From positions 124,001 through 188,000 of IMG/VR virus record IMGVR_UViG_3300033145_003233: DNA of 64,000 bases; one strand, given 5' to 3'. The number at the start of each line of letters is the position of its first letter. Position 1 is the stretch's first letter. Of the stretch, positions 6,591-47,757 are shown one piece after another. Under the pieces are notes generated by a model. The model saw nothing but the letters and a program-made list of their open reading frames with translations, made no database searches and was not told the DNA's origin. A program made the position numbers and the translations under genes.

Positions 6591-7404
6591 TCAATAAAGG
6601 ATGATCTTTCCATATAACATGTTTTTTATTTACTTTATTCTTAAATCCTTTTACCATCTTTTTGTATTTTCCTAGATAAGGTTTTTTATATTCTTTCTCT
6701 GAAAAACGATTCTCCCATGATACATACGCTTCTTTTTTGTCTGCCTCCAATAATAAAGAATCTTGAAACATCTTATATAAGAAGTTAAAATCTACTATTC
6801 TTTTATATTTTTTATGATGCCTGTGAAACCTATTATTTATTATGAGCCTATTACATTGTAATATATAAGGATAAAAAGCTAACATTCTAGTAAGTAAAAG
6901 GGTCCCACCTGTCCAATACCATGTAACCTCATTAAATCCTCCAAATATGGGAAAACATAAATCTAAAGTATCTTTATGAAGGCCAGAAATAATACACTCA
7001 TATTCTTTAACTGTGTTAATTTCCTTGTTATCGTCTAAATATGAGACAAACCCACCATAAGAGCTATTATCACAAGAAACCGTTCCGATAGCGGGCAGAT
7101 GCTCTAATAAAAAATTCTCATATACTTTCCAAGGATGTTTATCATTAGGATATTTATCTTTCCTAATTAATAACTCTAAATCATCATCTAAAAACACATA
7201 ATATAAATATTTCTTAGGAACTATCTCTGCCAATTTATTCCTGCCTTCTGACCATGCACAATCAAACAAGAAGGTGTTATTCTTATGGTTAACTGGTTTT
7301 TTATAAGAAAGAATATAAACGTCTCTACCCATATCTTCTAATACCTGAACGTAATCGGGAATGTAGTCGGGTGTTTGAACTAAATATGCTATTTCTTTAC
7401 TCAT
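6580..7404 (-). CDS. GT-A fold glycosyltransferase paralog 5
   Basis: GRNKL, YYVFLDDD. Confidence 0.72.
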   Translation of the reverse strand: MSKEIAYLVQTPDYIPDYVQVLEDMGRDVYILSYKKPVNHKNNTFLFDCAWSEGRNKLAEIVPKKYLYYVFLDDDLELLIRKDKYPNDKHPWKVYENFLLEHLPAIGTVSCDNSSYGGFVSYLDDNKEINTVKEYECIISGLHKDTLDLCFPIFGGFNEVTWYWTGGTLLLTRMLAFYPYILQCNRLIINNRFHRHHKKYKRIVDFNFLYKMFQDSLLLEADKKEAYVSWENRFSEKEYKKPYLGKYKKMVKGFKNKVNKKHVIWKDHPLLNDG

Positions 7405-8221
7405 TAATAAAAGGATGTCCTCTCCATAAAATGTGCGACTTGTCTATTCTATTTATAAAATTCTTCGCCATTTTTTTATATCTACCATTGCTAGGTTTTT
7501 TATATTCTTTATGAAGACAAGAATTACGAAAATGGAATGCATATGCTAATTTCTCCTTGTCCCCATCCTCCAATAAAGAGTCCTGATATATCTCAATAAG
7601 ATCATGATAATTAATTTCTCTAGGATATTCCCTATGCAATCTATCATTAAAGGTTAATTTATTACATTGTAAGACAAATGGAGATAAAAAAAACATACTA
7701 GTTGTTGAATATATCCATCCAGGCCACCACCAAGAAAAACTATCATAATGAGAACAAATGGGATAACAAACATCTATGACATCTTTATGAGCAGCAGAGA
7801 TAATAGAATTATGGAACCTGACAACATTTATCTCTTTAGTATCATCTATATACGTTGCTGCTCCGCTATTTGAAGCCTTCCCACAATAAACACTCCCAAT
7901 AGCAGGCATATGCTTTAATAAAAAATCTTCAAATATCTCCCATGGATTTTTGTCTATTTCTTCTGGATATCTCTCCTCTCTTACAAATAATTCTACATCA
8001 TCATCTAACAGAACATAATATAGATATTTCTTCGGGACTATCTCTACTAATTTATTTCTACCTTCGGCCCATGTACTATTAGGAAAAAATATATTGTTCT
8101 TGTGATCTATAGGTTTTTTATAAGACAATAAATAAACATCTCTTCCCATATCCTCTAATGTTTGAACGTAATCTGGAATATAATCTGGTGTCTGAACTAA
8201 ATATACTATTTCTTTACTCAT
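7397..8221 (-). CDS. GT-A fold glycosyltransferase paralog 4
   Basis: GRNKL, YYVLLDDD. Confidence 0.72.
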   Translation of the reverse strand: MSKEIVYLVQTPDYIPDYVQTLEDMGRDVYLLSYKKPIDHKNNIFFPNSTWAEGRNKLVEIVPKKYLYYVLLDDDVELFVREERYPEEIDKNPWEIFEDFLLKHMPAIGSVYCGKASNSGAATYIDDTKEINVVRFHNSIISAAHKDVIDVCYPICSHYDSFSWWWPGWIYSTTSMFFLSPFVLQCNKLTFNDRLHREYPREINYHDLIEIYQDSLLEDGDKEKLAYAFHFRNSCLHKEYKKPSNGRYKKMAKNFINRIDKSHILWRGHPFINE

Positions 8222-9044
8222 TTATAAAGGGATGGTCCTTCCAAAGAATATGATCCTTTTTTACCTTATTTTTAAATTCTTCCATTAAATTTTTATATTT
8301 GCCAGGATAAGGTTTTTTGTATTCTCCTGGAATAGGGTCCTTTTTATAAACAAATTCTAAATACACCTCATCCTTATCTTTTTTATTTATTATAGAAGAA
8401 CCAAAAAACCAGAACAAGGTGACTTTAGGAAAAACCCCATATTCAGGCCTGTGAAGATTATTTTTTAATATCAACTTATTACATTGCAATATAGAATTAG
8501 AAGCAAAAGCTATTTTAGTAGTTAAGATATAACAACATGCAGGCCATACCATACTAAATCTATCAAAACCTAAAAATAGAGGAAAGCATAAATCTAAAAC
8601 ATCCTTGTGAATAGCAGATAATATAGGCTCATGTTCTTTAAGAGTATTTATTTCTTTGTCGTCATCCAAATAATGTTTAAACTTGGCTTCAGTTAGCTCG
8701 TTAGAACAATAAACCGTTCCTATAGCAGGTTCGTATTTTATGAGAAAATCCCCAAATATTTTCCAAGGATTTTTATCAACATCTTCTGGATATTTTTTCT
8801 CTCTTACAAATAATTCCACATCATCGTCTATCATAACATAATATAGATATTTCTTAGGGACTATCTCTGCTAATTTATTTCTGCCTGAAGACCATGTGCT
8901 ATCAGGAAAGAATATACTATTCTTATATTCTACAGGCTTTTTCCATGAGAGGATATAAACATCTCCTCCCGCAGCCTCTAACATTTTAACATAGTTGGGA
9001 ATATAATCTGGAGTTTGAACTAAATATGCTATTTCTTTATTCAT
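8214..9044 (-). CDS. GT-A fold glycosyltransferase paralog 3
   Basis: GRNKL, YYVMIDDD. Confidence 0.72.
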   Translation of the reverse strand: MNKEIAYLVQTPDYIPNYVKMLEAAGGDVYILSWKKPVEYKNSIFFPDSTWSSGRNKLAEIVPKKYLYYVMIDDDVELFVREKKYPEDVDKNPWKIFGDFLIKYEPAIGTVYCSNELTEAKFKHYLDDDKEINTLKEHEPILSAIHKDVLDLCFPLFLGFDRFSMVWPACCYILTTKIAFASNSILQCNKLILKNNLHRPEYGVFPKVTLFWFFGSSIINKKDKDEVYLEFVYKKDPIPGEYKKPYPGKYKNLMEEFKNKVKKDHILWKDHPFINE

Positions 9045-9876
9045 TAATAAAAGGATGGTCCTTCCACAAAAAATGATCTTTATCTACTTCGTTTTTGAAT
9101 CTATCTATCATCTTTTTATATTTGTATGGATAAGGTTTCTCATAGTCATCTGGAACAGAATCATTTTCATAACTAAACTCTAAATATGTTTCTTTTTTAT
9201 CTCCTTTATTCAATAGAGAATTAGCAAACATCCAAAAAAGGATATTAGTATCTAACCCTCCTCTATGTCTCTCCCTGTGGAGGCTATTCTCTAATGCCAA
9301 TTTATTACATTGTAATATAGATGCATGAATACCAAAAGCTATCTTTGTAATTAATATGTATAAACTGGCCGTCCAGCACCATGGTTTATGGGCCTCATCG
9401 AACTTTAAACAGACAGGGAAACATAAATCTAAAGCTTCTCTATGGACAGCAGAAATAATAGGCTCATGCTCCTTAATAGTATTGATCTTTTTACTATCAT
9501 CTAAATAATGTCTAAAACGAGCTTTGGGGTGAGTGGAATTACAATAGACTCCCCCTATAGCTGGCTCATGCTTCAATAAGAAATCATCAAATATCTTCCA
9601 AGGATTACTGCTCTCGTTAGGATACCTTTCTTTTCTTATATGTAATTTTATATCATCATCTAGAAAGACATAATATAAATATTTCTTAGGGACTATCTCT
9701 GCCAATTTATTCCTACCAGAATAACATGTACTATCAGGAAAGAATATATTATTCTTATGAGCTATTGGCTTTTTATAAGACAATAAATAAACGTCTCTTT
9801 CCATATCTTCTAATGTTTGAACAAAATCTGGGATATAATCGGAAGTTTGAACTAAATATGCAATGTTATTATTCAT
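9037..9876 (-). CDS. GT-A fold glycosyltransferase paralog 2
   Basis: GRNKL, YYVFLDDD. Confidence 0.72.
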   Translation of the reverse strand: MNNNIAYLVQTSDYIPDFVQTLEDMERDVYLLSYKKPIAHKNNIFFPDSTCYSGRNKLAEIVPKKYLYYVFLDDDIKLHIRKERYPNESSNPWKIFDDFLLKHEPAIGGVYCNSTHPKARFRHYLDDSKKINTIKEHEPIISAVHREALDLCFPVCLKFDEAHKPWCWTASLYILITKIAFGIHASILQCNKLALENSLHRERHRGGLDTNILFWMFANSLLNKGDKKETYLEFSYENDSVPDDYEKPYPYKYKKMIDRFKNEVDKDHFLWKDHPFINE

Positions 9877-10708
9877 TGATAAAAGGATGATTTCTCCAAA
9901 GAATATGTTTCTTATTCACTCTCGTTTTAAAGTCTTCTACCATTTCTTTATATTTGTACGGATAAGGTCTTTTATATTCTTTATCGGGAGAATAGAGCCA
10001 AGAAGGAGAAGACATTAATGTTATTATATCTTTATCTGTTTCTTTTAAAAAAGAAGATTTATATAACTCATGAAAAAACTTTCCAGGATATAATAAATAT
10101 TTTCCAGTATGTCTTAATCTATCTGTGTTTTTTAATACTATTTTATTACATTGTAAAATACAGGACTTAAAAGCAAGTATAATATTTCTGGTGTATATGC
10201 CAGAAGCCCAATATATAGAAATTTTGTCAAAACCAGTATATATAGGAAAACATAGTTTCATAGCATCTTTATGGACAGCAGATAATATGGGTTCATGTTC
10301 CTTAACGGTCATTATGTCCATAGCATCATCTAAATACTTTGGTACAAGATTACCTTTTAATACAGGGTAGAAACAGAAACAGCTTCCTATGGCCGGTTTA
10401 TGCTCTAATAAGAAGTTCTCAAATATTTTCCAAGGATTTTTATTAGCATCTTCTGGATAATTTTTTATCTGGATGTTTAAATCTACATCGTCATCTAAAA
10501 ATACATAATATAGATATTTCTTAGGGACTATTTCAGCTAATTTATTTCTTCCTTCTGTCCATGTGCTATCTGGAAAAAATATATTGTTTTTGTGTTTTAC
10601 CGGCTTCTTCCATGAGAGAATATAAACTTCTCTTCCGATGTCCTCGATCATTTGAACATGATCGGGGATATAATCGGGGGCCTGAATTAAATATACTATC
10701 TCCTCCAT
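9869..10708 (-). CDS. GT-A fold glycosyltransferase paralog 1
   Basis: GRNKL, YYVFLDDD; first gene of array, GGTGGGG RBS. Confidence 0.72.
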   Translation of the reverse strand: MEEIVYLIQAPDYIPDHVQMIEDIGREVYILSWKKPVKHKNNIFFPDSTWTEGRNKLAEIVPKKYLYYVFLDDDVDLNIQIKNYPEDANKNPWKIFENFLLEHKPAIGSCFCFYPVLKGNLVPKYLDDAMDIMTVKEHEPILSAVHKDAMKLCFPIYTGFDKISIYWASGIYTRNIILAFKSCILQCNKIVLKNTDRLRHTGKYLLYPGKFFHELYKSSFLKETDKDIITLMSSPSWLYSPDKEYKRPYPYKYKEMVEDFKTRVNKKHILWRNHPFINE

Positions 10709-20042: not shown

Positions 20043-20260
20043 AAATCCATAATGTCAAATCTATCAATTATTGGTTTAGCATTTTTTTCTGATATATCAT
20101 GTTCTTTCCATAAACCACCTATCAATGCTGCAAGCTCATTATTAATTTTTCTTATCTTTTCTTCGGAGTCGGCATAATTGCAACTAAGAGAAGGATCATT
20201 GTTTATAGCATGTATCATGCTAATATGATTATTTAGTAATTTGCGTTCATCTGGTGTCAT
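20039..20260 (-). CDS. hypothetical protein, tag DRFDIMDL
   Basis: tag. Confidence 0.78.
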   Translation of the reverse strand: MTPDERKLLNNHISMIHAINNDPSLSCNYADSEEKIRKINNELAALIGGLWKEHDISEKNAKPIIDRFDIMDL

Positions 20261-20718
20261 TCTATAACTATATCCAGTTCATTGCCTAAATTTGTATCGT
20301 CCATACTTATATCTAATATATCTGATCTATTTGAGATTTCTTCTGATGGCCCTACTGGAGGCGAAAGCAAGTTATCATTTATCTCTTCTATTGCTTCTTC
20401 TGGAGCAATTGAAAATTGAATCCTTCGTGCAGAATAACTATACGAAATACGCCATTTACTATATATCTCAGCAAGTTTTTCTAATAATATCTTTCTGATT
20501 AAACATGGAATAATATCACAATCTTTAATCTTTTTAGTTGATCTTAATACTGATTTGCTTAATTCTCTTTCTGAGATAGAAACTTTACCATCTTGAATTA
20601 AAGTCAAATAATTTTCTCTTAAGTACTCATCTATAAATGATTCAGACCTCGAGACATATTCTTCTGCTATTTTATTAAACTGATTTTCTTCTAAAAGATC
20701 ATTCGGGGTCAATGACAT
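20257..20718 (-). CDS. ITPxD-family paralog, tag NRSDILDI plus tail
   Basis: MSLTPND..LY..W..F.P; tag. Confidence 0.78.
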   Translation of the reverse strand: MSLTPNDLLEENQFNKIAEEYVSRSESFIDEYLRENYLTLIQDGKVSISERELSKSVLRSTKKIKDCDIIPCLIRKILLEKLAEIYSKWRISYSYSARRIQFSIAPEEAIEEINDNLLSPPVGPSEEISNRSDILDISMDDTNLGNELDIVIE

Positions 20719-21115
20719 TACTATCTCCTAAATCCAATATGTCAGCCCTATTAGTTATTTCACTATCTTTTTTAGTCTCCGATGTAGTTTTTTCGAATTT
20801 TTTTATGGGAGAAAACTCTAATACATATTTAGAACTACCTGGCCCACCATATGTAGGACTTGCTTTTTCCTTTACAACCCAAGCAGGATATAGTTTGCCA
20901 AGAGCATCAATAAATTGTTCCCTAATTAGAACGGGGAATCTAGTATCATATGTACCCAATGTATGACCAATCAAATCTTCTTCCTTGATACGTACAAAAC
21001 CTTCCCTCATAAGTTGACTTGTATGGGTTCTTATATAATTATCTATATATGGCTCCGCCAATATAAGAGCACTATTTAATTTCTCTGATAAAATTTGATC
21101 AGGATCAACCGACAA
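20699..21115 (-). CDS. ITPxD-family paralog, tag NRADILDL
   Basis: family motifs; tag. Confidence 0.78.
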   Translation of the reverse strand: MSVDPDQILSEKLNSALILAEPYIDNYIRTHTSQLMREGFVRIKEEDLIGHTLGTYDTRFPVLIREQFIDALGKLYPAWVVKEKASPTYGGPGSSKYVLEFSPIKKFEKTTSETKKDSEITNRADILDLGDSNVIDPE

Positions 21116-21530
21116 TTCCTTCTCCTAAATCTAATATCTCTGACCTATGCTCTATCTGCTCTTCAGGTTGTAACACTTGCTTTTTCTTCTTAAAATTTTT
21201 GCGGGGAATAAAATCTAATGTATAATCAGGCCCATCACTTATTTTGTTAGTATAATTAGTCACTGTTCCCCTCTTTATCTCCCAATCAGGATATAACCTA
21301 ATAAGCTCCGCTATTAACTCCTCCCTAATTAATACGGGAAGTGAGCGACCATAAGTATCATTGTTAGTATGGAATATATGATGATTAAACGAAACTTCTC
21401 TAAAACGTATAAAGCCTGAGGTTAAAAGAGCAATCTCACAAGAAAGCAATGAATTGTCTATATAAGAGACTACACTATCAAGAGCATCTGAAAATCTTCT
21501 CTTTATAATATCATTAGAAGATACAGGCAT
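21105..21530 (-). CDS. ITPxD-family paralog, tag HRSEILDL
   Basis: start trimmed to MPVSSND; tag. Confidence 0.78.
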   Translation of the reverse strand: MPVSSNDIIKRRFSDALDSVVSYIDNSLLSCEIALLTSGFIRFREVSFNHHIFHTNNDTYGRSLPVLIREELIAELIRLYPDWEIKRGTVTNYTNKISDGPDYTLDFIPRKNFKKKKQVLQPEEQIEHRSEILDLGEGIVG

Positions 21531-21732
21531 TCCCACCACCCATGAAATAAAGAAACTCCACCACATCCCCATCATTAAGGTTTGTAGTATCAAAGCCATC
21601 CCTACGAAGTATCTCTCCATTTAACTCAACAGAGACCATATCAGGCATCTTGACCTTCTGCTCAGTTAATAAACCACTTACACTAATACCATCCTTGCTC
21701 TCTATGTATTCACCATTTACAATAAGATTCAT
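21514..21732 (-). CDS. thiS: ThiS/MoaD-family ubiquitin-like sulfur carrier with extension after GG
   Basis: VNGE...VSVELNGEI...GDVVEFLYFMGGG then NACIF. Confidence 0.85.
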   Translation of the reverse strand: MNLIVNGEYIESKDGISVSGLLTEQKVKMPDMVSVELNGEILRRDGFDTTNLNDGDVVEFLYFMGGGNACIF

Positions 21733-22091
21733 GATAAGTCCAAAATTTCAAATCTGCTGATTATAGGTTCCATATAAGTTGCTGTTATAGCATCCACTCT
21801 AGTATCCATTTCTCTAAAATCAAGAATAAGTATGATGTCATTAACATTATTTATTTGACGAAGAGAACAGGCGTAAAATTTACTGTCAATAATAAACCAT
21901 GCTGTACCTAATTCTAATTTAAATATTTCTGAATCCCTTCCAATCCCATAAAATTTATAATATCTTCCTGCACCACCATCGGTTATTAGCCATGGATCTC
22001 CCCTCTCCATATCAAATGTATTGACATTATCTCCCTGATAAACTTTGAGCCGTTGTTGAAGAATTCGTTCTATAATTATCTCATGAGTCAT
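21729..22091 (-). CDS. hypothetical protein, tag SRFEILDLS
   Basis: tag. Confidence 0.78.
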   Translation of the reverse strand: MTHEIIIERILQQRLKVYQGDNVNTFDMERGDPWLITDGGAGRYYKFYGIGRDSEIFKLELGTAWFIIDSKFYACSLRQINNVNDIILILDFREMDTRVDAITATYMEPIISRFEILDLS

Positions 22092-22094
22092 TAC

Positions 22095-22511
22095 TTACCA
22101 TTCTCCATCTGAATCTTCTAAATCTAACAATTCCGACCTATTCTCTACAGGAGCTACAGTCTCCTCTACAGAAGCAACTTCTTCAACTACTTGCTCCCTT
22201 GCTTGAGGATAAAATGCAAAAAAGCATTCACAGTTGCTTGATTGCATTTCTTCTACTATTTTCCAATCGGGATATAAAGGACTAAGACCTGAGAGCACAC
22301 CCAACCTAATAACTTTTGGAAAGTTTTTTTTCTGGCGGAATAAATGAGCATTTAACTTGTGCTCAGAAATCTTTACATATCCCTTCTCTAAAAAACTGTC
22401 ATATCTCGATAGCAATTGAGCATCTATATATATCTCTAACTTTTTGATATACTCATCCATCTTCTTTTGAAATCCATTCCTTTTCATAATCTCTTGTGGG
22501 GAAACTCCCAT
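22095..22511 (-). CDS. ITPxD-family paralog, tag NRSELLDL
   Basis: LYPDW; tag. Confidence 0.78.
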   Translation of the reverse strand: MGVSPQEIMKRNGFQKKMDEYIKKLEIYIDAQLLSRYDSFLEKGYVKISEHKLNAHLFRQKKNFPKVIRLGVLSGLSPLYPDWKIVEEMQSSNCECFFAFYPQAREQVVEEVASVEETVAPVENRSELLDLEDSDGEW

Positions 22512-22933
22512 TATTTATCTCCTAAATCTAATATCTCAGACCTATTCTCTATCTCAGACTCTCCTATATCTACGGTAGTAGGGGGAACAGGAGCAACAGG
22601 TGCTTCTATAACTACTTCTGCTCCCGCATTAGGAGTAAACTTTACCCAAGGTTCTGCTCTGTCAATCTCCCAATATATCGTCCAATCAAAATATAAATTA
22701 CTAATAATGGGGAATAAAGAGTTCCTAAGCAATGCAGGAATCTTTTTCCCCTTCTCTAAAAATTTCTTAGGTAGAAAATCTTTCTCAGATATAGCTATAT
22801 TTCCATCATTAATAAGTTCCTGATAATGAGAACTTATATAAGAGTCGATGCCTTGCTCGGCCGCTATAGCACACTCTTGTACTAAAGCTTCAAAATTATT
22901 ATCTATTAAAACTTGACCTGGAGAAATAGCCAT
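22511..22933 (-). CDS. ITPxD-family paralog, tag NRSEILDL
   Basis: LYFDW; tag. Confidence 0.78.
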   Translation of the reverse strand: MAISPGQVLIDNNFEALVQECAIAAEQGIDSYISSHYQELINDGNIAISEKDFLPKKFLEKGKKIPALLRNSLFPIISNLYFDWTIYWEIDRAEPWVKFTPNAGAEVVIEAPVAPVPPTTVDIGESEIENRSEILDLGDK

Positions 22934-23235
22934 TATTCATTTCCTAAATCTAAAATTTCAAATCTGTTATCTATTGAATTAAATATTGCTTCTTCTACTA
23001 ATTCTTCTATCATCTCATCACTCCAAATCCAACCAATCTCTACCATAGAATAACGAACACCCTCATTGCAAATACCTTTTATTGTAAGAATTCTATTAGA
23101 AATTGATTTTAATGCTTCTTCCATATCAGTTACAAAACGCCCTGGAATTGCAATAGCAAGGCCTGTACTGTCAAACTCCTTTGCCATGTCTACCCATGTC
23201 TTTATCTTTACTCTATCTCCTACTTTATATTTCAT
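22933..23235 (-). CDS. MKYKVGD (SH3/KOW-like) paralog, tag NRFEILDL
   Basis: KVGDRVKIKTW..RILTI..WSDEMIE. Confidence 0.8.
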   Translation of the reverse strand: MKYKVGDRVKIKTWVDMAKEFDSTGLAIAIPGRFVTDMEEALKSISNRILTIKGICNEGVRYSMVEIGWIWSDEMIEELVEEAIFNSIDNRFEILDLGNE

Positions 23236-23519
23236 ATATCTAAGATCTCAAATCTGTTATCTATTTCTTCTGCTAATCCCTCTCCTTCAAATCCTTCTAT
23301 CATCTCATCACCCCATTCATTGTCAGTTCCTTCCATGCGATAAGAATGATCCCCAATATATTGTATTGTAAGAATTCTATCAGGGAGGGATTCTAATAAT
23401 ATTTCCATACAAGTTGTAAAGGATAATGGCACTGCAATAGAAGAACCTTTAAGACCAAATTCTTTCTTCATGTCTACCCATGTTTTTATTTTTACTCTAT
23501 CTCCTATTTTATATCTCAT
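23232..23519 (-). CDS. MKYKVGD paralog, tag NRFEILDI
   Basis: same motifs. Confidence 0.8.
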   Translation of the reverse strand: MRYKIGDRVKIKTWVDMKKEFGLKGSSIAVPLSFTTCMEILLESLPDRILTIQYIGDHSYRMEGTDNEWGDEMIEGFEGEGLAEEIDNRFEILDI

Positions 23520-23815
23520 ATGTCTAAGATCTCAAATCTGTTACCTATTGGTTCGGGCATCTTTATTTCTTTTGCTAATCCCTCTATCATATCGTCAGTC
23601 CATCTCCAATCAATATCTTCCATATAATAATATCCTTTTTCAATGCTTTTTATTATAAGAATCCTGTCAGAATTTAAGTCGCTTTCCATTCTGCTTGTAA
23701 AATTGCCTGATGTTGCAAGAACCCAATCATCTGGCCTGTCCCACCTGTGCCCGAACTCTGCCAGCATCGCTTCCCATGCTTTTATCTTTACCTCGTCTCC
23801 TACTTTGTATTTCAT
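23516..23815 (-). CDS. MKYKVGD paralog, tag NRFEILDI
   Basis: same motifs. Confidence 0.8.
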   Translation of the reverse strand: MKYKVGDEVKIKAWEAMLAEFGHRWDRPDDWVLATSGNFTSRMESDLNSDRILIIKSIEKGYYYMEDIDWRWTDDMIEGLAKEIKMPEPIGNRFEILDI

Positions 23816-24105
23816 ATGTCTAAGATCTCAAATCTGTTATCTATTGGTTCTATTGTCTTTATGTCTTTTGCTAATCCCTCTATCATATCATCAGTCCAAG
23901 ACCAACGAACATTTTCCATCTCATAAAAATCTTCTTTAACTTTTCGTATTATAAGAATCCTGTCAGAATTTAATGATTTTTCCATGTCAGTTATAAAAGT
24001 TTTTGATACTTTAAGAACCCGATCTTCTCCTGGCTGACACCCAAACTCTGCTTTCATCTCTTTCCATGTTTTTATCTTTACCTCGTCTTCTACTTTGTAT
24101 TTCAT
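23812..24105 (-). CDS. MKYKVGD paralog, tag NRFEILDI
   Basis: same motifs. Confidence 0.8.
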   Translation of the reverse strand: MKYKVEDEVKIKTWKEMKAEFGCQPGEDRVLKVSKTFITDMEKSLNSDRILIIRKVKEDFYEMENVRWSWTDDMIEGLAKDIKTIEPIDNRFEILDI

Positions 24106-24326
24106 ATGTCTAAGATCTCAAATCTACTTTCAATTATATCTTCAGAATTTAATCTCTTTGGATTATCATAATCTAAATGACCATACTCCCTATAAAACGA
24201 GGCAGCAGTACATTGCCATTTATTATAATAGTTACATTCAGGCAATCCATCATGGCCAGGTAATTTACAAAGTGTTTTTTTCTCAAATTCACACTCTCTA
24301 CTCATTTTGCCATAAGATTCCTTCAT
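24102..24326 (-). CDS. Cys-rich protein, tag SRFEILDI
   Basis: tag. Confidence 0.78.
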   Translation of the reverse strand: MKESYGKMSRECEFEKKTLCKLPGHDGLPECNYYNKWQCTAASFYREYGHLDYDNPKRLNSEDIIESRFEILDI

Positions 24327-24730
24327 TGCTCATCACCTAAATCCAATATCTCTGCTCTATTCGTGATAACCTCATCAGGAGTTATTTCTTTCTGAACTCC
24401 CTCACCCACACTAGTACCTAATTCTTCTCTATAATTTATCTTAACTTTAGGAGATAATGCCAAATATTGAGAACCAACCGCGAATTTTAAATTCCAGCTT
24501 TTATATATTTTTCGCAATGGAACCATAAGATCATTTTCTGCAAAACCATGACTAGATTCAGTAAGTAGTTTCCATGGAATCCATACATAATTTAATTTAC
24601 ATATCTGCTCTTGTTCATCTACTATGTACCCGTTGATTATTGTTATACATGCACCAACAGCAGCTTCTAACCTTTTTTTCTGCTTACCGATATAAGCTAT
24701 CTTAATATCTTCTGGAGTTATCTCTTCCAC
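24323..24730 (-). CDS. ITPxD-family paralog, tag NRAEILDL
   Basis: MEEITPEDI; tag. Confidence 0.8.
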   Translation of the reverse strand: MEEITPEDIKIAYIGKQKKRLEAAVGACITIINGYIVDEQEQICKLNYVWIPWKLLTESSHGFAENDLMVPLRKIYKSWNLKFAVGSQYLALSPKVKINYREELGTSVGEGVQKEITPDEVITNRAEILDLGDEQ

Positions 24731-24731
24731 A

Positions 24732-25127
24732 CTAATCCTCTAAATCCAATATCTCTGCCCTATGCTCTATCACTTCATTAGGAGCAACAGACTTATTTTT
24801 CTTCTTAATCTGACCAATATTTAAACTAAGCTCATCACTTATTTTTTTGCGGGAAGAAAAACGAATGTGTAATCCATCTTTTCTAATCTCCCAAGCAGTA
24901 TATATCTCTTTTAAGTATTTAAGTATGTCATCATATTCCCTGTTGTTTTCATAATTGATATGGTCACTAGTGATAAAATAGATATATCCATCTCTACATA
25001 TTTGTTCACATCTTTCTAATAATGCATCGTTAAGAGATTCTATAGCTGATTCTATCTTTATTTTTAGTTGCTCTCCATATGTCTCTATATATTTTTTTCT
25101 TACATCATCTGGTGTTATGCCATCCAT
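24732..25127 (-). CDS. ITPxD-family paralog, tag HRAEILDL
   Basis: MDGITPDDV; tag. Confidence 0.8.
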   Translation of the reverse strand: MDGITPDDVRKKYIETYGEQLKIKIESAIESLNDALLERCEQICRDGYIYFITSDHINYENNREYDDILKYLKEIYTAWEIRKDGLHIRFSSRKKISDELSLNIGQIKKKNKSVAPNEVIEHRAEILDLED

Positions 25128-25128
25128 G

Positions 25129-25590
25129 CTATTCCCCTAAATCCAATAACTCAGATCTATTCTCTACTGGACTATCCCTAACAACAATCTCAACCTCACT
25201 ACAATTAGGTTCTTTTTCTTCTTCCGATTTTTCTTCTAAAGTATTATCAAAAGGAGTCTTTGGCCTAAATCTAAAATAATAGTTAGATCCATAATTAGAT
25301 TCAACTATCCAACTAGTAAAAGTATCTTGTACGGCTTTTTTTATGAATTTCCAATTATAACCTAAATTTATCTCTTCTTTTATAAAGGACCGTTTAGGAA
25401 AAATAGATGATTGGTATATATCAATATAACCATCTAATATTAATTGACTCTTATCTTTTGATAATGTTTTATTAATTATCTGTATAGCATGGTTAATAAG
25501 ATTCTCTATTTTTGTCTTATTTACTTTTATATATTGATTTCTAATCATATCAGGTGTTATTTCTTCTTTATTATCACTCCAAACTTTCAT
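25129..25590 (-). CDS. ITPxD-family paralog, tag NRSELLDL
   Basis: start trimmed to MKVWS; EEITPDMI; tag. Confidence 0.78.
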   Translation of the reverse strand: MKVWSDNKEEITPDMIRNQYIKVNKTKIENLINHAIQIINKTLSKDKSQLILDGYIDIYQSSIFPKRSFIKEEINLGYNWKFIKKAVQDTFTSWIVESNYGSNYYFRFRPKTPFDNTLEEKSEEEKEPNCSEVEIVVRDSPVENRSELLDLGE

Positions 25591-25591
25591 A

Positions 25592-25777
25592 TCAACTTTC
25601 CAAAACCTTCTTAATCTTCTCTGCCATGTCCATACCAAGCTCTCTAGTCGCATAGTCTATTATTGCAATATTACATATTGCATTCTTAGAGGAATCTTTA
25701 CATACAACCCATATAGGACGGTCTTTTAACATTCCCGAACCTTTCCATGGCTCTATTTCAACTTTTTCTGTTTTCAT
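25592..25777 (-). CDS. hypothetical protein (untagged)
   Basis: coupled ORF. Confidence 0.65.
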   Translation of the reverse strand: MKTEKVEIEPWKGSGMLKDRPIWVVCKDSSKNAICNIAIIDYATRELGMDMAEKIKKVLES

Positions 25778-26145
25778 TCTCTTAAATCCAATATTTCTGA
25801 CCTATTTTGAACTTTCTCAATTTCTTCTTCTATATCTGAAGAACTGACAGGTTTATCGTCTCTCATAACTTCATTTAAATGAATTTTTAACCCTTCTTTT
25901 AATGTAAAGAGGAGTTTTCCATCATCTTTTGTAACTTCCCAATCTTCATATATTGCATTTAAAGCCTTTATAAGAATTTCAAGATCATTATCATATTTAT
26001 AAGAAATATGACAGCGACCTGTTTGACCTACCTTTTTATAATTAGCCAATAATGTTTTATTAATAACTGTCATGGCCTTTTGTACTTCTTGACCTATAAA
26101 TTCTGTAAATTTTTCTTTAATATCATCTGATGTTACGGGTTTCAT
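25774..26145 (-). CDS. ITPxD-family paralog, tag NRSEILDL
   Basis: PVTSDDI; tag. Confidence 0.8.
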   Translation of the reverse strand: MKPVTSDDIKEKFTEFIGQEVQKAMTVINKTLLANYKKVGQTGRCHISYKYDNDLEILIKALNAIYEDWEVTKDDGKLLFTLKEGLKIHLNEVMRDDKPVSSSDIEEEIEKVQNRSEILDLRE

Positions 26146-26146
26146 A

Positions 26147-26524
26147 CTAAGTCCCTAAATCCAAAATTTCTGCTCTATTATCTATAATATCGTCAGTACT
26201 TACCGGCTTATTTTCTCCTTTAATCTTAACTGAATCTAATTTAATCTCATCTATAGAATCCTTAGCAGAAAAAGTCATAGAAAGACCATTCTTAGTGATA
26301 TTCCAATCAGCATATATCTTTTGTAAATATTCAATAATAGTGTAAATTTCTGTGCTATTAGCATATTCCATTCCACTAATAGGAATATTAACATAACCTT
26401 TCTGACAGATTAATCTATAATTAGCTAATAATGCCTTATTGAAATAAGCTACTGCTATACCAACCTTCTTCTCTAAATCAGCTTTATATGTATCTTTGAT
26501 AGTTTTAATAGTCATACCTTCCAT
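26147..26524 (-). CDS. ITPxD-family paralog, tag NRAEILDL
   Basis: IYADW; tag. Confidence 0.8.
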   Translation of the reverse strand: MEGMTIKTIKDTYKADLEKKVGIAVAYFNKALLANYRLICQKGYVNIPISGMEYANSTEIYTIIEYLQKIYADWNITKNGLSMTFSAKDSIDEIKLDSVKIKGENKPVSTDDIIDNRAEILDLGT

Positions 26525-26979
26525 TATATATCCAATATCTCTGACCTATTATCTATTGAACTATCAACAACAACTTCTTCTTTTTTCTTTTTTTCCGATT
26601 TTTTATCTAATTTCATAGTGAAATCAGAGCCAGGATGAAATCTAAAGTAATATTCTCCACCAGCTCTATTAGATTCTATATTCCAACTTGTAAAAATATC
26701 CTGTACAGCTTTATTTATAAATTGCCAAGTATTTTTTAAATCTAATCTTTTTCCATCAAAGGATTTATTTGGGAAAATATGTTTTTGGCCTACATCAATA
26801 CTGCCACTCTCTATTAATTCTTTAGTTCCTGCTGATAGCTTTCCATTAATTATTTGTACAGTGTGACGAATAAGATTTTGTATCTTTATATCGTTTTTAT
26901 TTATATACTTATTTCTAAGCATATCGGGAGTTATCTCTTCTTCACTATCACTCCATGTTTCTTGAGGTTCACATCTCAT
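26524..26979 (-). CDS. ITPxD-family paralog, tag NRSEILDI
   Basis: EEITPDML; tag. Confidence 0.8.
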   Translation of the reverse strand: MRCEPQETWSDSEEEITPDMLRNKYINKNDIKIQNLIRHTVQIINGKLSAGTKELIESGSIDVGQKHIFPNKSFDGKRLDLKNTWQFINKAVQDIFTSWNIESNRAGGEYYFRFHPGSDFTMKLDKKSEKKKKEEVVVDSSIDNRSEILDI

Positions 26980-26980
26980 C

Positions 26981-27432
26981 TTATTTCTCTAAATCTAACA
27001 ACTCTGACCTACTATCTATCGAAATATCAATAACATCAACTTTTTTTCTTTTGATTTTTTATCCAATGTTGTATCAAGAGGGGTTCTTGCTCTAAAGTTT
27101 AAAGATCTAGTCCGATCAACAATAGATTCAACATTCCAATTTGTAAAAGTGTTCTGTACGGCTCTAACTATAAATACCCAAGTACTGATTAAATCTATTT
27201 CATCTTTTTTAAACATAGGTTCAGGAAAAATAAATTCTTGATTTATTTTAATGCTGTTATTTTTCATTAGGTCTACAGACCCCTGTGATAAACCTTTATT
27301 AACCATTTGTATAGTATGACTAATAAGCTTTTTTATTTTTTCTGAGTTACGCTTTAAATACTCATCTCTGAGCATCTCAGGTATTATCTCTTCTTTATTT
27401 TTACTCCATGTGTTTTGAGGTTCACATCTCAT
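26981..27432 (-). pseudogene. ITPxD-family paralog frameshifted in an A7 run before tag SRSELLDLEK
   Basis: one extra A at 27041-27047 restores VDVIDISIDSRSELLDLEK*. Confidence 0.75.
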
Positions 27433-27433
27433 C

Positions 27434-27895
27434 TTATTTCTCTAAATCTAACAACTCTGACCTGTTCTCTATTGCCTCTCCAGGGACTATTGCCTCTTCT
27501 TTCGCTTCTAATTCTATTTTTATGTTTTTATCAATAAGTTCTTTGGGAGAAAATTTAAAATGAGGGTTTGCTTTATTCTTAACCAGCTTTACGTCCCATT
27601 CTGTGAAAACTCCATAAATAGTTACATAAATAAAATCTATTCTTTCAGATTTTTTCGAAAAATTCCAATTCTTTCCATTTATAGTGATTCTATCAATAAA
27701 AACCTCGTCCCATAAAGAAGCAAAAGTATCTTTATATACTATGATAATAGTGCCATCTTTAACAATAGAATCACTATGATATTTTAAATCTTCATTAACG
27801 ATTTTTATAGTTGAAGAAATAACCTTCTCTATTACAGAAATATGTTTATCCTTATATCCATTCAGGATGTTCTCTGGAGTTATAGGCTCTTCCAT
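27434..27895 (-). CDS. ITPxD-family paralog, tag NRSELLDL
   Basis: EPITPENI; tag. Confidence 0.8.
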   Translation of the reverse strand: MEEPITPENILNGYKDKHISVIEKVISSTIKIVNEDLKYHSDSIVKDGTIIIVYKDTFASLWDEVFIDRITINGKNWNFSKKSERIDFIYVTIYGVFTEWDVKLVKNKANPHFKFSPKELIDKNIKIELEAKEEAIVPGEAIENRSELLDLEK

Positions 27896-28071
27896 TAGTT
27901 ACTCTTCCGCAAATGGAAGGTTCATCCATTCTTCAAAACATTTTGCTTTGCAAAAATCTTTCTTATGGAATCTATCAGGCAATGTTATTCCACTCCTATT
28001 ACCAAGATATCCTTCTAATTTTATTCTTTCTTCCCCACAAATTTCTCCACAAAAATCACATTTTATAATAA

Positions 28072-28275
28072 TCATTTTTCTCCTCCTAAATCTAAAATAT
28101 CTATTCTACTCTCTATCCCTTCATCGAGAATTTCTTCTATTTTCTCTAATTGAGAAAACTGAACGACTTGGAACTTTTTTTGACAATGATCACAAATCTG
28201 TTCACCTGAGATGTCTTTTACCATTTTAAGTTTCTTATCACAATGAGGGCATATCTTACTATATAAATATTCCAT
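28072..28275 (-). CDS. CxxC protein, tag SRIDILDL
   Basis: CPHC/CDHC; tag. Confidence 0.78.
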   Translation of the reverse strand: MEYLYSKICPHCDKKLKMVKDISGEQICDHCQKKFQVVQFSQLEKIEEILDEGIESRIDILDLGGEK

Positions 28276-28697
28276 TACTTTTCTCCCAAATCTAAAATCT
28301 CTGCTCTGTTATTTATAATATCGTTAAGAGTTACTTCTTTCTTCTGTTTCTTGTTAAAATCTACTCGTATTTCTATATCAATAGGAGTTTTAGGTCTAAA
28401 ACAAAAATAGTGACCTCCAGAATAGAAATAAGAACTTACTTTCCAATTCTTATAAAATTTACGTACGTTGTCCGCCAAAACCGTCCATCTACTTTCAATA
28501 GCTTTTGCACAGAATCCATCATTATCAAGATCTCCTCTGGCCTTCACATAAACAAAGCCATCATCTACTATCGCTTGATATCTCTCTTTTAATAATTTGT
28601 TTATAATATCTATAGAATAGGAAACGAGATTTTCCATTATCGGGGTTTCTTTGTCTATATATAATTCTTTAATATTTTCTGGTGTTACTTCTTCCAT
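28275..28697 (-). CDS. ITPxD-family paralog, tag NRAEILDL
   Basis: EEVTPENI; tag. Confidence 0.8.
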   Translation of the reverse strand: MEEVTPENIKELYIDKETPIMENLVSYSIDIINKLLKERYQAIVDDGFVYVKARGDLDNDGFCAKAIESRWTVLADNVRKFYKNWKVSSYFYSGGHYFCFRPKTPIDIEIRVDFNKKQKKEVTLNDIINNRAEILDLGEK

Positions 28698-29110
28698 TAT
28701 ATATCCAATATATCAAATCTGCTCTCTACTGGTTCAGTAGTAATTAAAGGAATATCTTTTTTCTGTTCGGCAGTAGGGGCCATCTCTATTACAATAGGTT
28801 CTTTCGGCATAAATTGAAAATACCGTCCCTTATTTTCACAACCTGAAGCTATATCCCAACTTTTAAAAAATTTGCCTAAACAATCTCCCAAGAGTTCCCA
28901 ACTGGTATCTGTTGCTCTGAAGCCTTTAGGAAGATTTAAATCTGAACGAAGTATGTTAAGATATCCAGATGAGATAATAACTTTATACTTATCTACTAAT
29001 ATCTGATTAATAGTTTCTATACATGGAGACACTAATCCATCTAATAATGGAATCTCTTTTTCCATAAATATATTTTTGATATCTTCGGGAGTTACTTCTT
29101 TCATATCCAT
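28697..29110 (-). CDS. ITPxD-family paralog, tag SRFDILDI
   Basis: KEVTPEDI; tag. Confidence 0.8.
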   Translation of the reverse strand: MDMKEVTPEDIKNIFMEKEIPLLDGLVSPCIETINQILVDKYKVIISSGYLNILRSDLNLPKGFRATDTSWELLGDCLGKFFKSWDIASGCENKGRYFQFMPKEPIVIEMAPTAEQKKDIPLITTEPVESRFDILDI

Positions 29111-29178
29111 TCCCCATAAAATTATCCAAACTTATTATATACTAAATGTTTTCACTTTCAAATGTTTAATTGAGAAAC

Positions 29179-30417
29179 CTAGAGAAGAAATGCTAATTTA
29201 TAGTATTTAGATATGTTGTAGTCTATGTAGGGTAGATAGCTGTTTATGTCTATTTTGAGTGGGGTTATTTTTTTACCTATGTAAGATTCTAGGTGATATT
29301 GAGTAGTTTTAGTCCCGTATGAGTAGTGAAAATCTTCATGACAATTATGGCATAAACAGACAGTTTTTGATAATTCTTTGCTAATTTTACCGCGGCCTTC
29401 TTTGTGCATTATGCTTATTTTTTTATACTTTAAATCACTTTCTACGTGATGGAATAATAAGATAGCAGGATCGTTAATTTTACAATTTATACAAAATAGC
29501 GATTTTTTGAATTCCCAAATCATTAGATGGTTTCTGCATAAAGTTTTCTTATTAGTAGGAGAACGAAGATACCGTTTTATTAAAATATCTTCTCTCTCTT
29601 TAGAAGTTCCTATATGTATAATGGTATGACAATTCTTGCATTTAACCACCCCTTTTTTGAATTCTTTATTTATTCGCTCAATGCTGTGGCTACACATTTT
29701 TCTAATCGAATTATCTTTTTCTAAAGGATTTAAATGGTGGAAAGATAATTTGGTTATTTTTTTTTCTCCACAATCACATCCCTGAGTAGTCATGCGTTTT
29801 TTTATATCTTCCCATTTTATTGCCATTTTTGCTCTTTGGAGAGGCTTCTGTTTGTCCCACCATCTTTTTTTTATGAGTTTACTAACCTTTTCTTCTATTT
29901 GATCAGGAAAAGGAATGATGAAATATCTATATACCTTCTCTCTAGTTTTTTGGTGAATATGACATAAGTATTCTGCTTTCTGGCAAATATCATATGATCG
30001 TATTTTTAAGTATATGGAAGAATATTTTTCCATCCGTATATTATGTTGTTTTTTATTACGATTTTCTACAATTCTTTTTAATATCTTATTATGCTGAGTT
30101 AGATCTGAAGAGTACCAATGCTTGTAATATTTACTTCGTAAATCTCTTTTCTTATTGCAAATTTTTTCTTCTATTTGATCAGAAAAAGGAATGATAAAAT
30201 ATCTATATATTTTCTTTCTAGTTTTTTTATTAACTTCATAAAGAATTTCTGCTTTTACATCTATGTTATAAGATTTTATCTTATTATAAAATGGAGAATA
30301 TTGTTTTAACCATCTTTTGTCATTAGCTTTTTTTATGCTGTTCTTATACTTCTCGGGGTTTTCTTGTTGCCATTTTTTTTTATGTTGTAGTTGTTTTGAC
30401 TTATCTTTATATGCCAT
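29179..30417 (-). CDS. endonuclease with two HNH domains
   Basis: LSFHHL..VKCKNCHTIIH and LLFHHV..CLCHNCHEDFH; duplicated N-terminal segment. Confidence 0.82.
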   Translation of the reverse strand: MAYKDKSKQLQHKKKWQQENPEKYKNSIKKANDKRWLKQYSPFYNKIKSYNIDVKAEILYEVNKKTRKKIYRYFIIPFSDQIEEKICNKKRDLRSKYYKHWYSSDLTQHNKILKRIVENRNKKQHNIRMEKYSSIYLKIRSYDICQKAEYLCHIHQKTREKVYRYFIIPFPDQIEEKVSKLIKKRWWDKQKPLQRAKMAIKWEDIKKRMTTQGCDCGEKKITKLSFHHLNPLEKDNSIRKMCSHSIERINKEFKKGVVKCKNCHTIIHIGTSKEREDILIKRYLRSPTNKKTLCRNHLMIWEFKKSLFCINCKINDPAILLFHHVESDLKYKKISIMHKEGRGKISKELSKTVCLCHNCHEDFHYSYGTKTTQYHLESYIGKKITPLKIDINSYLPYIDYNISKYYKLAFLL

Positions 30418-47430: not shown

Positions 47431-47687
47431 TCTCTGCGTCCTTTAATCTTTGGTTTTCTGTCATATGAGATATTGCTTTTATACAAATTTCATCTGTATC
47501 GGCTGGTAATCCTAAATCTTCGAGCATCGCTGCCCAAATTACCTTACTCTTACAATCTTCTTTATATATTGTTCCATTCATTCCACTTTTCCTTATTATA
47601 ACCTATTTTCTACCTTACGTCAAGAAAAAATTACTTGTCTGGAAATTAATAACTTAATCCTTCTTTCACTTTCAAGTGTTATTTAAC

Positions 47688-47757
47688 AGGTCGCTAGGGG
47701 TACGATCCCTAAACTGAACTTTTGGAGAGTCCTGTGATGCCAATTTCACCAACGACC
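47688..47757 (-). tRNA. tRNA-Trp(CCA)
   Basis: cloverleaf, GGACT-CTCCAAA-AGTTC. Confidence 0.85.

What the first reader, a model, noticed from the sequence alone, without database searches (positions are those of the whole stretch)
20257..29110. Fifteen-member ITPxD paralog family uses its own tag dialect
Seen: 15 genes of 123-154 aa share an N-terminal [IV]TPxD-like motif and a [LI]Yx.W..F.P-like C-terminal core. Fourteen carry R-[SA]-[ED]-[IL]-L-D-[LI], often with a G/E tail, whereas 28 of the other 29 tagged ORFs use R-F. Inference: two tag classes with different affinity or partner, inside a second large gene-family expansion of unknown function.
Basis: partly seen in the sequence, partly recalled or inferred. 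Interest (0 to 1): 0.6.

Follow-up and report, generated by a model that had tools for sequence, protein, structure and literature searches.

The report
Megaphage protein family with variant C-terminal tag
A 548-kb phage carries 15 tandem copies of a new small protein whose shared C-terminal address tag has serine or alanine where the phage's other tagged proteins have phenylalanine, a difference kept in unrelated metagenomic phages; what the tag binds is unknown.

Summary
The window (part of a 547,943-bp virus record) has exactly 43 minus-strand ORFs ending in R-x-[ED]-[ILM]-[LM]-D-[LI]: 28 R-F, 9 R-S, 5 R-A and 1 R-I, against 0.3 expected by chance. All 14 R-[SA] tags belong to one 15-gene family. 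The 15th member has R-F. One R-S tag is separated from its gene body by a frameshift.

Homology of the 15 genes holds with the tag removed. Synonymous codons vary at every tag position, so selection acts on the peptide.

The fold model is confident. It shows a roughly 100-residue, mostly acidic, winged-helix-like core, a roughly 28-residue K/E-rich disordered linker, then the tag.

About 38 relatives elsewhere in metagenomes also prefer small residues at tag position 2. Pooled counts are 41 of 53 family tags against 12 of 160 non-family tags. Four independent contigs show the same contrast. F or Y arose at least 9 separate times in the family and never spread.

The "G/E tail" is mostly the Shine-Dalgarno site of the next gene. 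Some distant members carry an SSB-like acidic ...D-I-P-F tip instead of the tag.

Best reading: tethered proteins that dock on a shared, unidentified hub through a family-specific tag variant. Whether the variant changes affinity or partner was not tested.

The parts
28697..29110 (-). Family member 1 (137 aa), subfamily B. The only member with an R-F tag: P at -4 and no tail.
28275..28697 (-). Family member 2 (140 aa), tag N-R-A-E-I-L-D-L plus G-E-K. This is the protein that was folded.
27434..27895 (-). Family member 3 (153 aa), R-S tag plus E-K.
27016..27432 (-). Family member 4 (138 aa as assembled). The body ends untagged. The heptamer A_AAA_AAG lies in frame near 27041-27047.
26981..27058 (-). 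Out-of-frame tag of member 4 (S-R-S-E-L-L-D-L-E-K), reached by a -1 shift or by one extra A.
26524..26979 (-). Family member 5 (151 aa), R-S tag, no tail.
26147..26524 (-). Family member 6 (125 aa), R-A tag plus G-T.
25774..26145 (-). Family member 7 (123 aa), R-S tag plus R-E.
25129..25590 (-). Family member 8 (153 aa from the ATG at 25590), R-S tag plus G-E.
24732..25127 (-). Family member 9 (131 aa), R-A tag plus E-D.
24323..24730 (-). Family member 10 (135 aa, GTG start), R-A tag plus G-D-E-Q.
22511..22933 (-). Family member 11 (140 aa), subfamily A, R-S tag plus G-D-K.
22095..22511 (-). Family member 12 (138 aa), subfamily A, R-S tag plus a 7-aa tail.
21105..21530 (-). Family member 13 (141 aa from the ATG at 21530; a 76%-identical relative starts at the same place), R-S tag plus a 6-aa tail.
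20699..21115 (-). Family member 14 (138 aa, TTG start), R-A tag plus a 9-aa tail.
20257..20718 (-). Family member 15 (153 aa), R-S tag plus a 16-aa acidic tail.
29134..29161 (-). Best sigma-70-like promoter match of the region (TTGAAA, 16 nt, TATAAT; 11 of 12), in the 69-nt gap just upstream of the first family gene.
   Evidence: Consensus match only; the total number of promoter-like sites is not above the shuffled expectation.
22933..24329 (-). Interleaved non-family tagged genes: four paralogues of about 100 aa plus one 75-aa ORF, all R-F.
21729..22091 (-). Interleaved non-family tagged gene (120 aa), R-F tag plus S.
28072..28308 (-). Interleaved zinc-ribbon-like tagged ORF (78 aa), R-I tag plus G-G-E-K.

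Best explanation
The 15 genes are tandem paralogues of a previously undescribed phage protein family. Each protein has three parts:
- a folded core of about 100 residues, mostly acidic and winged-helix-like. The N-terminal T-P-x-D looks like a helix N-cap (my reading of the model, not tested);
- a disordered, K/E-rich tether of about 28 residues, conserved in length but not in sequence;
- a C-terminal short linear motif.

The same motif, I-x-[NSD]-R-hydrophobic-[ED]-I-L-D-[LI], ends about 60-75 small proteins of unrelated sequence in this phage and dozens in related huge phages. I infer it is a docking peptide that brings them to one common receptor. The receptor is not identified, and a host protein is as likely as a phage one.

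If the tag is read as a helix, I(-3), F(+1) and L(+4) fall on one face, which makes F the central anchor. The family replaces that anchor with S or A, mostly lacks the Pro at -4, and tolerates residues after the tag. I infer a weaker or differently seated docking mode that selection maintains for this family. One possible reason is that the core adds its own contacts.

Shown: the family, the fold model, peptide-level conservation of the tag, and the cross-genome persistence of the variant. Inferred: docking, the role of F as anchor, and any affinity difference.
For: Tag is real and C-terminal.
- 43 tags in the window against 0.3 in shuffles.
- 62 of 63 strict matches genome-wide lie at a C-terminus.

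Selection is on the peptide.
- Synonymous variation occurs at every tag codon, including the R codons AGA, AGG, CGT and CGG.

The family is homologous without the tag.

Structure.
- AF2 model: pLDDT 88.5, pTM 0.73; the core is well ordered and the linker has pLDDT about 60.
- The best structural matches are almost all winged-helix domains, at Z 5-7.7.
- Median core pI is 5.8; median linker length is 27.5 aa.

The variant follows the family.
- 55 profile hits in 1.84 billion proteins, about 38 of them not from this phage.
- Position 2 of those relatives' tags: S 16, A 10, T 2, F 6, Y 2, E 2, C 1.
- Pooled: 41 of 53 small in the family against 12 of 160 elsewhere, p = 2e-22.
- In contig L076, one family member with R-A sits among 22 non-family tags that are R-F or R-L. 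L073, L074 and L075 show the same contrast.
- Aromatic states are nine separate leaves on the tree.

Tips are modular.
- Distant members P0043, P0054 and G000:244860-245387 keep the core but end in an acidic tail with ...D-I-P-F...D-V-P-F or ...D-C-P-F.
Against: - No receptor was found.
- The single complex prediction (the phage AAA ATPase with an R-F tail) gave no verdict.
- The variant is also what inheritance from one S/A-tagged ancestor would give. The Fisher tests are not corrected for relatedness, and the quick tree has mostly weak branches.
- S/A/T tags occur on about 5% of unrelated tagged proteins, and F or Y on about 17% of family members. The classes therefore overlap, and either residue may simply be tolerated.
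- The helix reading of the tag rests on a low-confidence part of the model.
- Structural matches at Z below 8 may only reflect a common arrangement.
Confidence: 0.5

Rival explanations
1. Neutral dialect. The tag works the same with F or with S/A. The family merely inherited S/A from its founder, and position 2 is loosely constrained.
For: - Both residue classes occur inside and outside the family.
- All 14 R-[SA] tags of the window belong to one tandem family.
- Tree support is weak.
Against: - Family branch lengths are about 0.5-1.5 changes per site, and the linker next to the tag is unconserved. Even so, position 2 stays S, A or T in 41 of 53 family tags.
- S codons are all TCN, one step from F or L. 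Such switches happened at least 9 times and each stayed a single leaf.
- Outside the family the same position is hydrophobic in about 90% of tags.
- A loosely constrained site would show a wider mix of residues.
Confidence: 0.27
2. Degron or timer. The tag is a degradation or unfolding signal for a AAA+ machine, either the host's or the phage's own conserved AAA ATPase. The S/A variant sets a different turnover rate for this family.
For: - The tag is terminal, and the tagged proteins are small and lie in early-looking arrays behind a sigma-70-like promoter.
- The phage encodes classic-clade AAA ATPases that are 66-76% identical across the three tag-rich huge phages.
- The orthologues of one of these ATPases (75-76% identical) all end in [RK]-D-L-D-L.
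Against: - The complex prediction gave no verdict.
- That AAA family (phrog_8638) is also found in Corndog-like mycobacteriophages and Rhizobium phages, which have no known tag of this kind.
- No ClpP homologue was found in the genome.
- An acidic residue at -2 is the opposite of ssrA-type ClpX signals (established knowledge: the ssrA-DD control).
- A 33.5-kb phage with two tagged genes has no homologue of the AAA ATPase.
Confidence: 0.12
3. Replisome or SSB-partner mimicry. The tag imitates the C-terminal tip of a DNA-metabolism hub protein. Candidates are tips like those of T4 gp32 or of T4 clamp-binding proteins, or an AAA+ arginine-finger strand. The family would then be tethered inhibitors or recruiters at host or phage replication and repair proteins.
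For: - Distant family members carry an SSB-like acidic ...D-I-P-F tip in place of the tag.
- T4 gp32 ends ...D-L-L-N-D-L and T4 gp33 ends ...T-L-D-F-L-L.
- The tag profile's best PDB match is the MCM2 arginine-finger strand E-P-I-[LV]-S-R-F-D-I-L.
- The core is winged-helix-like.
Against: - The MCM match has E = 0.09, which is not significant.
- The phage's own SSB ends ...E-E-F-D-S-I, not with the tag.
- No gp32, gp45 or beta-clamp homologue was detected in the genome.
- The tag lacks the Q and the terminal F of QL[SD]LF motifs.
- More than 60 unrelated proteins all aimed at the replisome seems excessive.
Confidence: 0.08
4. Nucleic-acid signal. The conserved element acts as DNA or RNA, for example in translational coupling, and the peptide is a by-product.
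For: - Gene ends overlap the next start (ATGA, TAATG), and the tails encode Shine-Dalgarno sites.
- The commonest DNA form of the tag also occurs as non-coding AT-rich simple sequence in bacterial genomes.
Against: - Third positions and whole codon families vary while the amino acids stay fixed.
- The motif always sits in the frame of the upstream ORF and at its end.
- The tag is kept where the next gene is 176-214 nt away.
Confidence: 0.03

Closest known systems
Bacterial SSB: OB fold, disordered linker, acidic C-terminal tip (...D-D-D-I-P-F)
   Same: The architecture is the same: folded domain, flexible linker, short C-terminal docking tip. Three distant family members actually end in an acidic tail with ...D-I-P-F...D-V-P-F or ...D-C-P-F.
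   Different: The core is not an OB fold. The 15 window genes carry R-[SA]-E-I-L-D-L, not an SSB tip. In SSB one protein's tip binds many partners; here many proteins share one tip.
T4 C-terminal docking tips: gp32 (...D-L-L-N-D-L) and the gp45-clamp-binding tails of gp33 (...T-L-D-F-L-L)
   Same: These are phage proteins that end in an acidic-hydrophobic L-D-hydrophobic peptide used to dock on a hub (sequences read; function from the record's annotation, and established T4 literature).
   Different: There is no R-hydrophobic-E prefix, and the spacing differs. Only a handful of T4 proteins carry such tips. No gp32 or gp45 homologue was detected in this genome.
SspB-type protease adaptors (substrate-binding domain, linker, C-terminal ClpX-binding peptide)
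   Same: The domain-tether-tip logic is the same, and the tip sets how the protein is tethered to a machine (established knowledge).
   Different: The tip sequence is unrelated (L-R-V-V-K type) and there is no fold similarity. No link to a protease is shown here.
Cargo-loading and targeting peptides of encapsulins, and the T4 capsid targeting sequence
   Same: One short terminal peptide is shared by unrelated proteins as an address (established knowledge).
   Different: Those peptides target a capsid-like shell, and the T4 signal is N-terminal and cleaved. The tagged genes here lie in early-looking arrays, not structural modules. No virion data exist.
Winged-helix domains (kleisin C-terminal WHD, ScpB, ESCRT-II, PurR N-terminal domain)
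   Same: They share the helix / strand / helix / beta-hairpin arrangement; Z 5-7.7 over 65-90 residues.
   Different: Foldseek gave no match with E <= 0.001 against either the PDB or BFVD. The core is mostly acidic (median pI 5.8), unlike DNA-binding winged helices. There is an extra long N-terminal helix.

Membership tests
C-terminal R-x-[ED]-I-L-D-[LI] tag class of these huge phages | Motif within a few residues of the stop codon, in the frame of the upstream ORF | tested here: met
   14 of 15 members as assembled; the 15th only after a -1 shift.
C-terminal R-x-[ED]-I-L-D-[LI] tag class of these huge phages | Hydrophobic residue (F, L, Y, W, I, M) at position 2 and Pro often at -4, as in the majority class | tested here: not met
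   Position 2 is S or A in 14 of 15 members. Pro at -4 occurs in 11% of family tags against 36% of others.
Winged-helix fold | Helix / strand / helix-helix / beta-hairpin topology matched to solved winged-helix domains | tested here: inconclusive
   VIA Z 5-7.7, mostly winged-helix domains. Foldseek gave no match with E <= 0.001 against the PDB.
Winged-helix fold | Basic recognition surface for DNA | tested here: not met
   Median core pI 5.8, range 4.4-9.5. This is a charge estimate only; no surface was mapped.
SSB-type C-terminal tip | Acidic tail ending in [DE]-[DE]-x-P-F at the carboxyl end | tested here: not met
   None of the 15 window genes has it. It is present in distant members P0043, P0054 and G000:244860-245387.
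Bacterial beta-clamp-binding motif QL[SD]LF / QLxLxL | Q at position 1 and a hydrophobic pair at the end | tested here: not met
   The tag consensus has no Q and ends L-D-[LI].
T4 gp45-clamp-binding tail ([ST]-L-D-F-L-[LF]) | L-D-F followed by two hydrophobic residues at the C-terminus, plus a gp45-type clamp in the genome | tested here: not met
   Only L-D-hydrophobic is shared. No PF02916 hit in G000.
ssrA-like ClpX degron | Non-polar last three residues (L-A-A type) with a free carboxylate | tested here: not met
   There is an Asp at -2, and most family tags are followed by 1-16 further residues.
AAA+ arginine-finger strand (MCM P-I-L-S-R-F-D-[IL]) | Significant sequence match and a location inside an AAA+ domain | tested here: inconclusive
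   The tag profile against the PDB gives E = 0.09 to MCM2. The tag is a terminal peptide, not part of an ATPase domain.
dnaX-type programmed -1 frameshift (member 27016-27432) | Slippery heptamer A_AAA_AAG in the zero frame | tested here: met
   Read directly from the sequence. A -1 shift gives the tagged product.
dnaX-type programmed -1 frameshift (member 27016-27432) | Stimulatory downstream structure | tested here: not met
   The fold of 26975-27062 has z = -0.6 against shuffles.
Pfam / PHROG families | Match above threshold to any curated family | tested here: not met
   No Pfam hit passes its cut-off. Against PHROGs, one member has a weak hit at E 0.006.

The most novel reading that the evidence does not exclude
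The heptapeptide is an addressing code that sends roughly a tenth of a megaphage's genes (about 60-75 small early proteins) to a single hub. It would have at least two selected affinity or seating classes. The ITPxD proteins would be tethered effectors whose tips can be exchanged between R-x-E-I-L-D-L and an SSB-like ...D-I-P-F, redirecting the same core to different cellular hubs. That would make this a modular targeting system not yet described in phages.
Probability: 0.25. Interest if true: 0.85.

Novelty: new variant of a known kind. Interest (0 to 1): 0.62.

Why it matters
Huge phages are full of small genes with no known function. A shared terminal peptide is a handle on dozens of them at once: one pull-down with the peptide could name the hub they converge on. 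The ITPxD family offers a natural contrast, because the same tag scaffold carries a different anchor residue that has been kept across genomes. This makes the question of what position 2 does directly testable with two peptides. The swap of tips between this tag and an SSB-like tail suggests that phages reuse one effector core with different addresses. That would be a useful design principle and a route to new host-takeover or anti-defence factors.

Tried and rejected
- **Family libraries.** Pfam and PHROGs scans of the family and of 20 other tagged or neighbouring proteins gave nothing informative. One tagged protein in a related phage has DUF4116 repeats.
- **DNA similarity.** Megablast of the region against GenBank phages found no match.
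- **Word-indexed protein search.** It found only the query itself.
- **DNA pattern for the S/A tag in IMG/VR.** No hit.
- **DNA pattern for the R-F tag in bacterial genomes.** 14 hits. Twelve are in frames of 9-25 codons, apparently non-coding AT-rich sequence. Two are at the ends of long, apparently spurious frames in high-GC genomes. None says anything about the host.
- **Bacteroidota-type promoter pattern.** Not enriched.
- **Literature.** Searches for the motif strings and for jumbo-phage C-terminal motifs found nothing relevant.
- **Structure searches.** Foldseek against the PDB and BFVD, and the ESM Atlas shape search, gave no convincing relative.
- **Candidate receptors in the genome.** Searches for beta-clamp, gp45, gp32, ClpP and PDZ found nothing.
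- **Complex prediction.** The phage AAA ATPase with a 40-residue R-F tail gave no verdict. This is not evidence either way.
- **Tag as a DNA or RNA signal.** Rejected because of synonymous variation.
- **ITPxD core as the universal tag receptor.** Set aside, because tag-rich phages G001-G003 have no ITPxD homologue.
- **Genetic code.** No alternative code was used or needed.

Full report
**Setting**

The window is bases 124,001-188,000 of a 547,943-bp virus record, rated complete, with 33.6% G+C. Nearly all genes of 150 aa or more are on the minus strand, and there are 27 tRNA genes. Table 11 reads the region cleanly. No other genetic code was used.

**The tag**

A scan of all six frames finds 43 ORFs in the window whose last residues are R-x-[EDG]-[ILM]-[LMI]-D-[ILFM].
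- All 43 are on the minus strand between 12.4 and 29.1 kb. Codon-block shuffles give 0.3.
- Position 2 is F in 28, S in 9, A in 5 and I in 1.
- Across the whole genome, 62 of 63 strict matches lie no more than 16 residues before a stop. With M allowed at position 5 there are more, so the genome has roughly 60-75 tagged ORFs.
- Every codon of the motif varies synonymously: R as AGA, AGG, CGT or CGG; F as TTT or TTC; E as GAA or GAG; I as ATT, ATA or ATC; L as TTA, TTG, CTG or CTA; D as GAT or GAC. Conservation is therefore on the peptide, not on the DNA.
- Three other virus records carry the same tag. They are of 351 kb (33 tags), 298 kb (27 tags) and 33.5 kb (2 tags). In almost all of these the tag ends exactly at the C-terminus.
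- The small phage shares only two partial, nuclease-like proteins with the huge ones. A host-encoded receptor is therefore at least as likely as a phage-encoded one.

**The family**

Fifteen ORFs between 20,257 and 29,110 align over their whole length.
- An HMM of the core alone, with tag and linker cut off, recovers exactly these 15 from the ORFs of four phage genomes. It also finds a 16th, distant member at G000:244860-245387.
- Two subfamilies exist: five genes at 20.2-22.9 kb and ten at 24.3-29.1 kb. They find each other reciprocally, and hhalign gives 97% probability, E 3e-11.
- Member 27016-27432 ends untagged. Its tag sits in another frame just downstream, behind A_AAA_AAG in the zero frame. 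A -1 shift or one extra A would restore a tagged product. No downstream structure stands out, and reads could not be consulted. An assembly error, a pseudogene and programmed frameshifting all remain open.

**Structure**

With a 52-sequence alignment, AlphaFold2 gives pLDDT 88.5 and pTM 0.73.
- The elements are a long helix (6-38), a short helix, a strand, a helix (68-81) and a beta-hairpin (85-102). A low-confidence stretch follows, with a short helix at the tag.
- The conserved N-terminal T-P-x-[DE] sits at the start of helix 1. I read it as a helix N-cap; this is an inference.
- An exhaustive structural comparison returns almost only winged-helix domains, at Z 5-7.7. Foldseek finds no match with E <= 0.001 against the PDB or BFVD, and the ESM Atlas shape search adds no convincing relative. 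"Winged-helix-like" is as far as the evidence goes.
- Cores have a median length of 98 aa and a median pI of 5.8. Linkers have a median length of 27.5 aa, are rich in K and E, and are unconserved in sequence.
- The architecture is therefore domain, tether, tip.

**Relatives and the dialect**

A profile search of 1.84 billion representative proteins finds 55 hits, about 38 of them not from this phage.
- Position 2 of the relatives' tags is S in 16, A in 10, T in 2, F in 6, Y in 2, E in 2 and C in 1.
- Four independent metagenomic contigs show the contrast side by side:

| Contig | Family members | Non-family tagged neighbours |
|---|---|---|
| L076 | 1 with R-A | 22 with R-F or R-L |
| L073 | 1 with R-A | 6 with R-F, 1 with R-T |
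| L074 | 1 with R-S | 2 with R-F |
| L075 | 3 with R-S or R-A | 3 with R-F |

- Pooled counts, family against non-family:

| Feature | Family (n = 53) | Non-family (n = 160) | p |
|---|---|---|---|
| Small residue at position 2 | 41 | 12 | 2e-22 |
| Tail after the tag | 34 | 20 | 1e-12 |
| Pro at -4 | 6 | 58 | 5e-4 |

- These tests ignore relatedness. On a tree built from core columns only, the nine F or Y members are nine separate leaves among small-residue members.
- In this phage the S codons are all TCN (TCA, TCG, TCT) and the A codons are GCA or GCT. A single base change would give F or L.
- Together these results say that the small residue is the family's long-kept state, that switches are easy and recurrent, and that they do not spread. 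That is the signature of constraint, not proof of a different function.

**The tail**

In this phage the residues after the tag (G-D-K, G-E, E-D, G-T and the like) are encoded by GGAG, GAGG, GGGG, GGGA or GGTG, placed 8-12 nt (15 nt in one gene) before the next start codon. They are the ribosome-binding site of the downstream gene.
- The tail goes with the family, not with S/A. Eight genuine non-family S/A/T tags have no tail, and four of nine aromatic family tags have one.
- The family's tag therefore tolerates not being the very end of the chain, whereas 140 of 160 other tags are exactly terminal.

**Modular tips**

Two database relatives and the 16th genomic member keep the core but lack a proper tag. 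They end in a long acidic tail with ...D-I-P-F...D-V-P-F or ...D-C-P-F.
- This is the signature of the SSB C-terminal tip (established knowledge).
- The same core is thus found with two different addresses. This supports reading the tag as an address.

**What the tag might bind**

Nothing decisive was found.
- The tag profile's best PDB match is the MCM2 arginine-finger strand, at E = 0.09. This is a lead only.
- T4 gp32 and gp33 end in related acidic-hydrophobic tips.
- The phage's own SSB ends differently.
- No clamp, gp32, ClpP or PDZ homologue was detected.
- A classic AAA ATPase is 75-76% identical across the three huge phages, and all its orthologues end in [RK]-D-L-D-L. Its family also occurs in phages with no known tag of this kind.
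- The one complex prediction gave no verdict.

**Expression context**

The best sigma-70-like match of the region lies in the gap immediately upstream of the first family gene. No minus-strand terminator-like site lies inside the family block. Most gene junctions overlap or are 1-3 nt apart. This fits one long, translationally coupled, early-type operon; that reading is an inference.

**Verdict**

The family and its tag variant are real and conserved, and no matching curated family or paper was found in the libraries searched. The functional meaning of the variant and the identity of the receptor remain open.

Noticed in passing
window 936-10708 (-): Twelve head-to-tail paralogues of 254-293 aa. 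They share a conserved Y-Y-V-F-L-D-D-D-V-E-L stretch (a DxD motif), suggestive of GT-A-type glycosyltransferases. The two copies scanned had no Pfam hit.
   Followed up: partly
window 21514-21732 (-): A 72-aa ThiS-family ubiquitin-like ORF (Pfam E 1e-12) sits inside the tagged-gene array. Its G-G is followed by extra residues (ending ...G-G-G-N-A-C-I-F), as in sulfur carriers that need trimming by a JAMM peptidase.
   Followed up: partly
window 27016-27058 (-): A dnaX-type slippery heptamer A_AAA_AAG lies in frame. A -1 shift joins the gene body to its R-S tag, so tagged and untagged isoforms are possible. No stimulatory structure was found, and reads were not available.
   Followed up: partly
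window 46126-47430 (-): A 434-aa protein has WGR, PARP regulatory and PARP catalytic domains (Pfam E 2e-27). This is a eukaryote-style poly(ADP-ribose) polymerase in a phage.
   Followed up: no
window 47686-59550 (-): Twenty-seven tRNA genes lie in clusters, interspersed with small ORFs. A LAGLIDADG endonuclease is at 44655-46058.
   Followed up: no
G000:244860-245387 (-), outside the window: A sixteenth, distant family member. It has a degenerate tag (D-R-F-G-N-I-D-L) followed by a long acidic tail ending ...E-D-D-C-P-F, like an SSB tip. It lies next to further tagged ORFs.
   Followed up: partly
G000:417268-418944 (-); orthologues G001:101044-102702 and G002:20755-22440: A classic-clade AAA ATPase (phrog_8638) is conserved at 75-76% identity. 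All three orthologues end in [RK]-D-L-D-L, a short version of the tag, after an unconserved stretch.
   Followed up: partly
window 22933-24105 (-): Four tandem paralogues of about 100 aa begin M-[KR]-Y-K-[VI]-[GE]-D. All carry R-F tags, and their starts overlap the previous stop (ATGA).
   Followed up: no
window 29179-30417 (-): A 412-aa Cys/His-rich ORF that looks HNH-like, with an internal duplication of its N-terminal half. No Pfam hit. It lies just upstream of the array's promoter-like site.
   Followed up: no
L028:16682-17797 (G001:136682-137800): The largest tagged protein seen (371 aa) is built of eight DUF4116 repeats and ends in N-R-F-E-I-L-D-L. The tag is therefore not restricted to very small proteins.
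   Followed up: no
L059-L072 (bacterial genome contigs): The commonest DNA spelling of the R-F tag turns up in Bacteroidota and other MAGs. In twelve loci it lies in frames of only 9-25 codons, that is as non-coding AT-rich sequence, and in one locus in tandem. It is a trap for pattern searches.
   Followed up: yes
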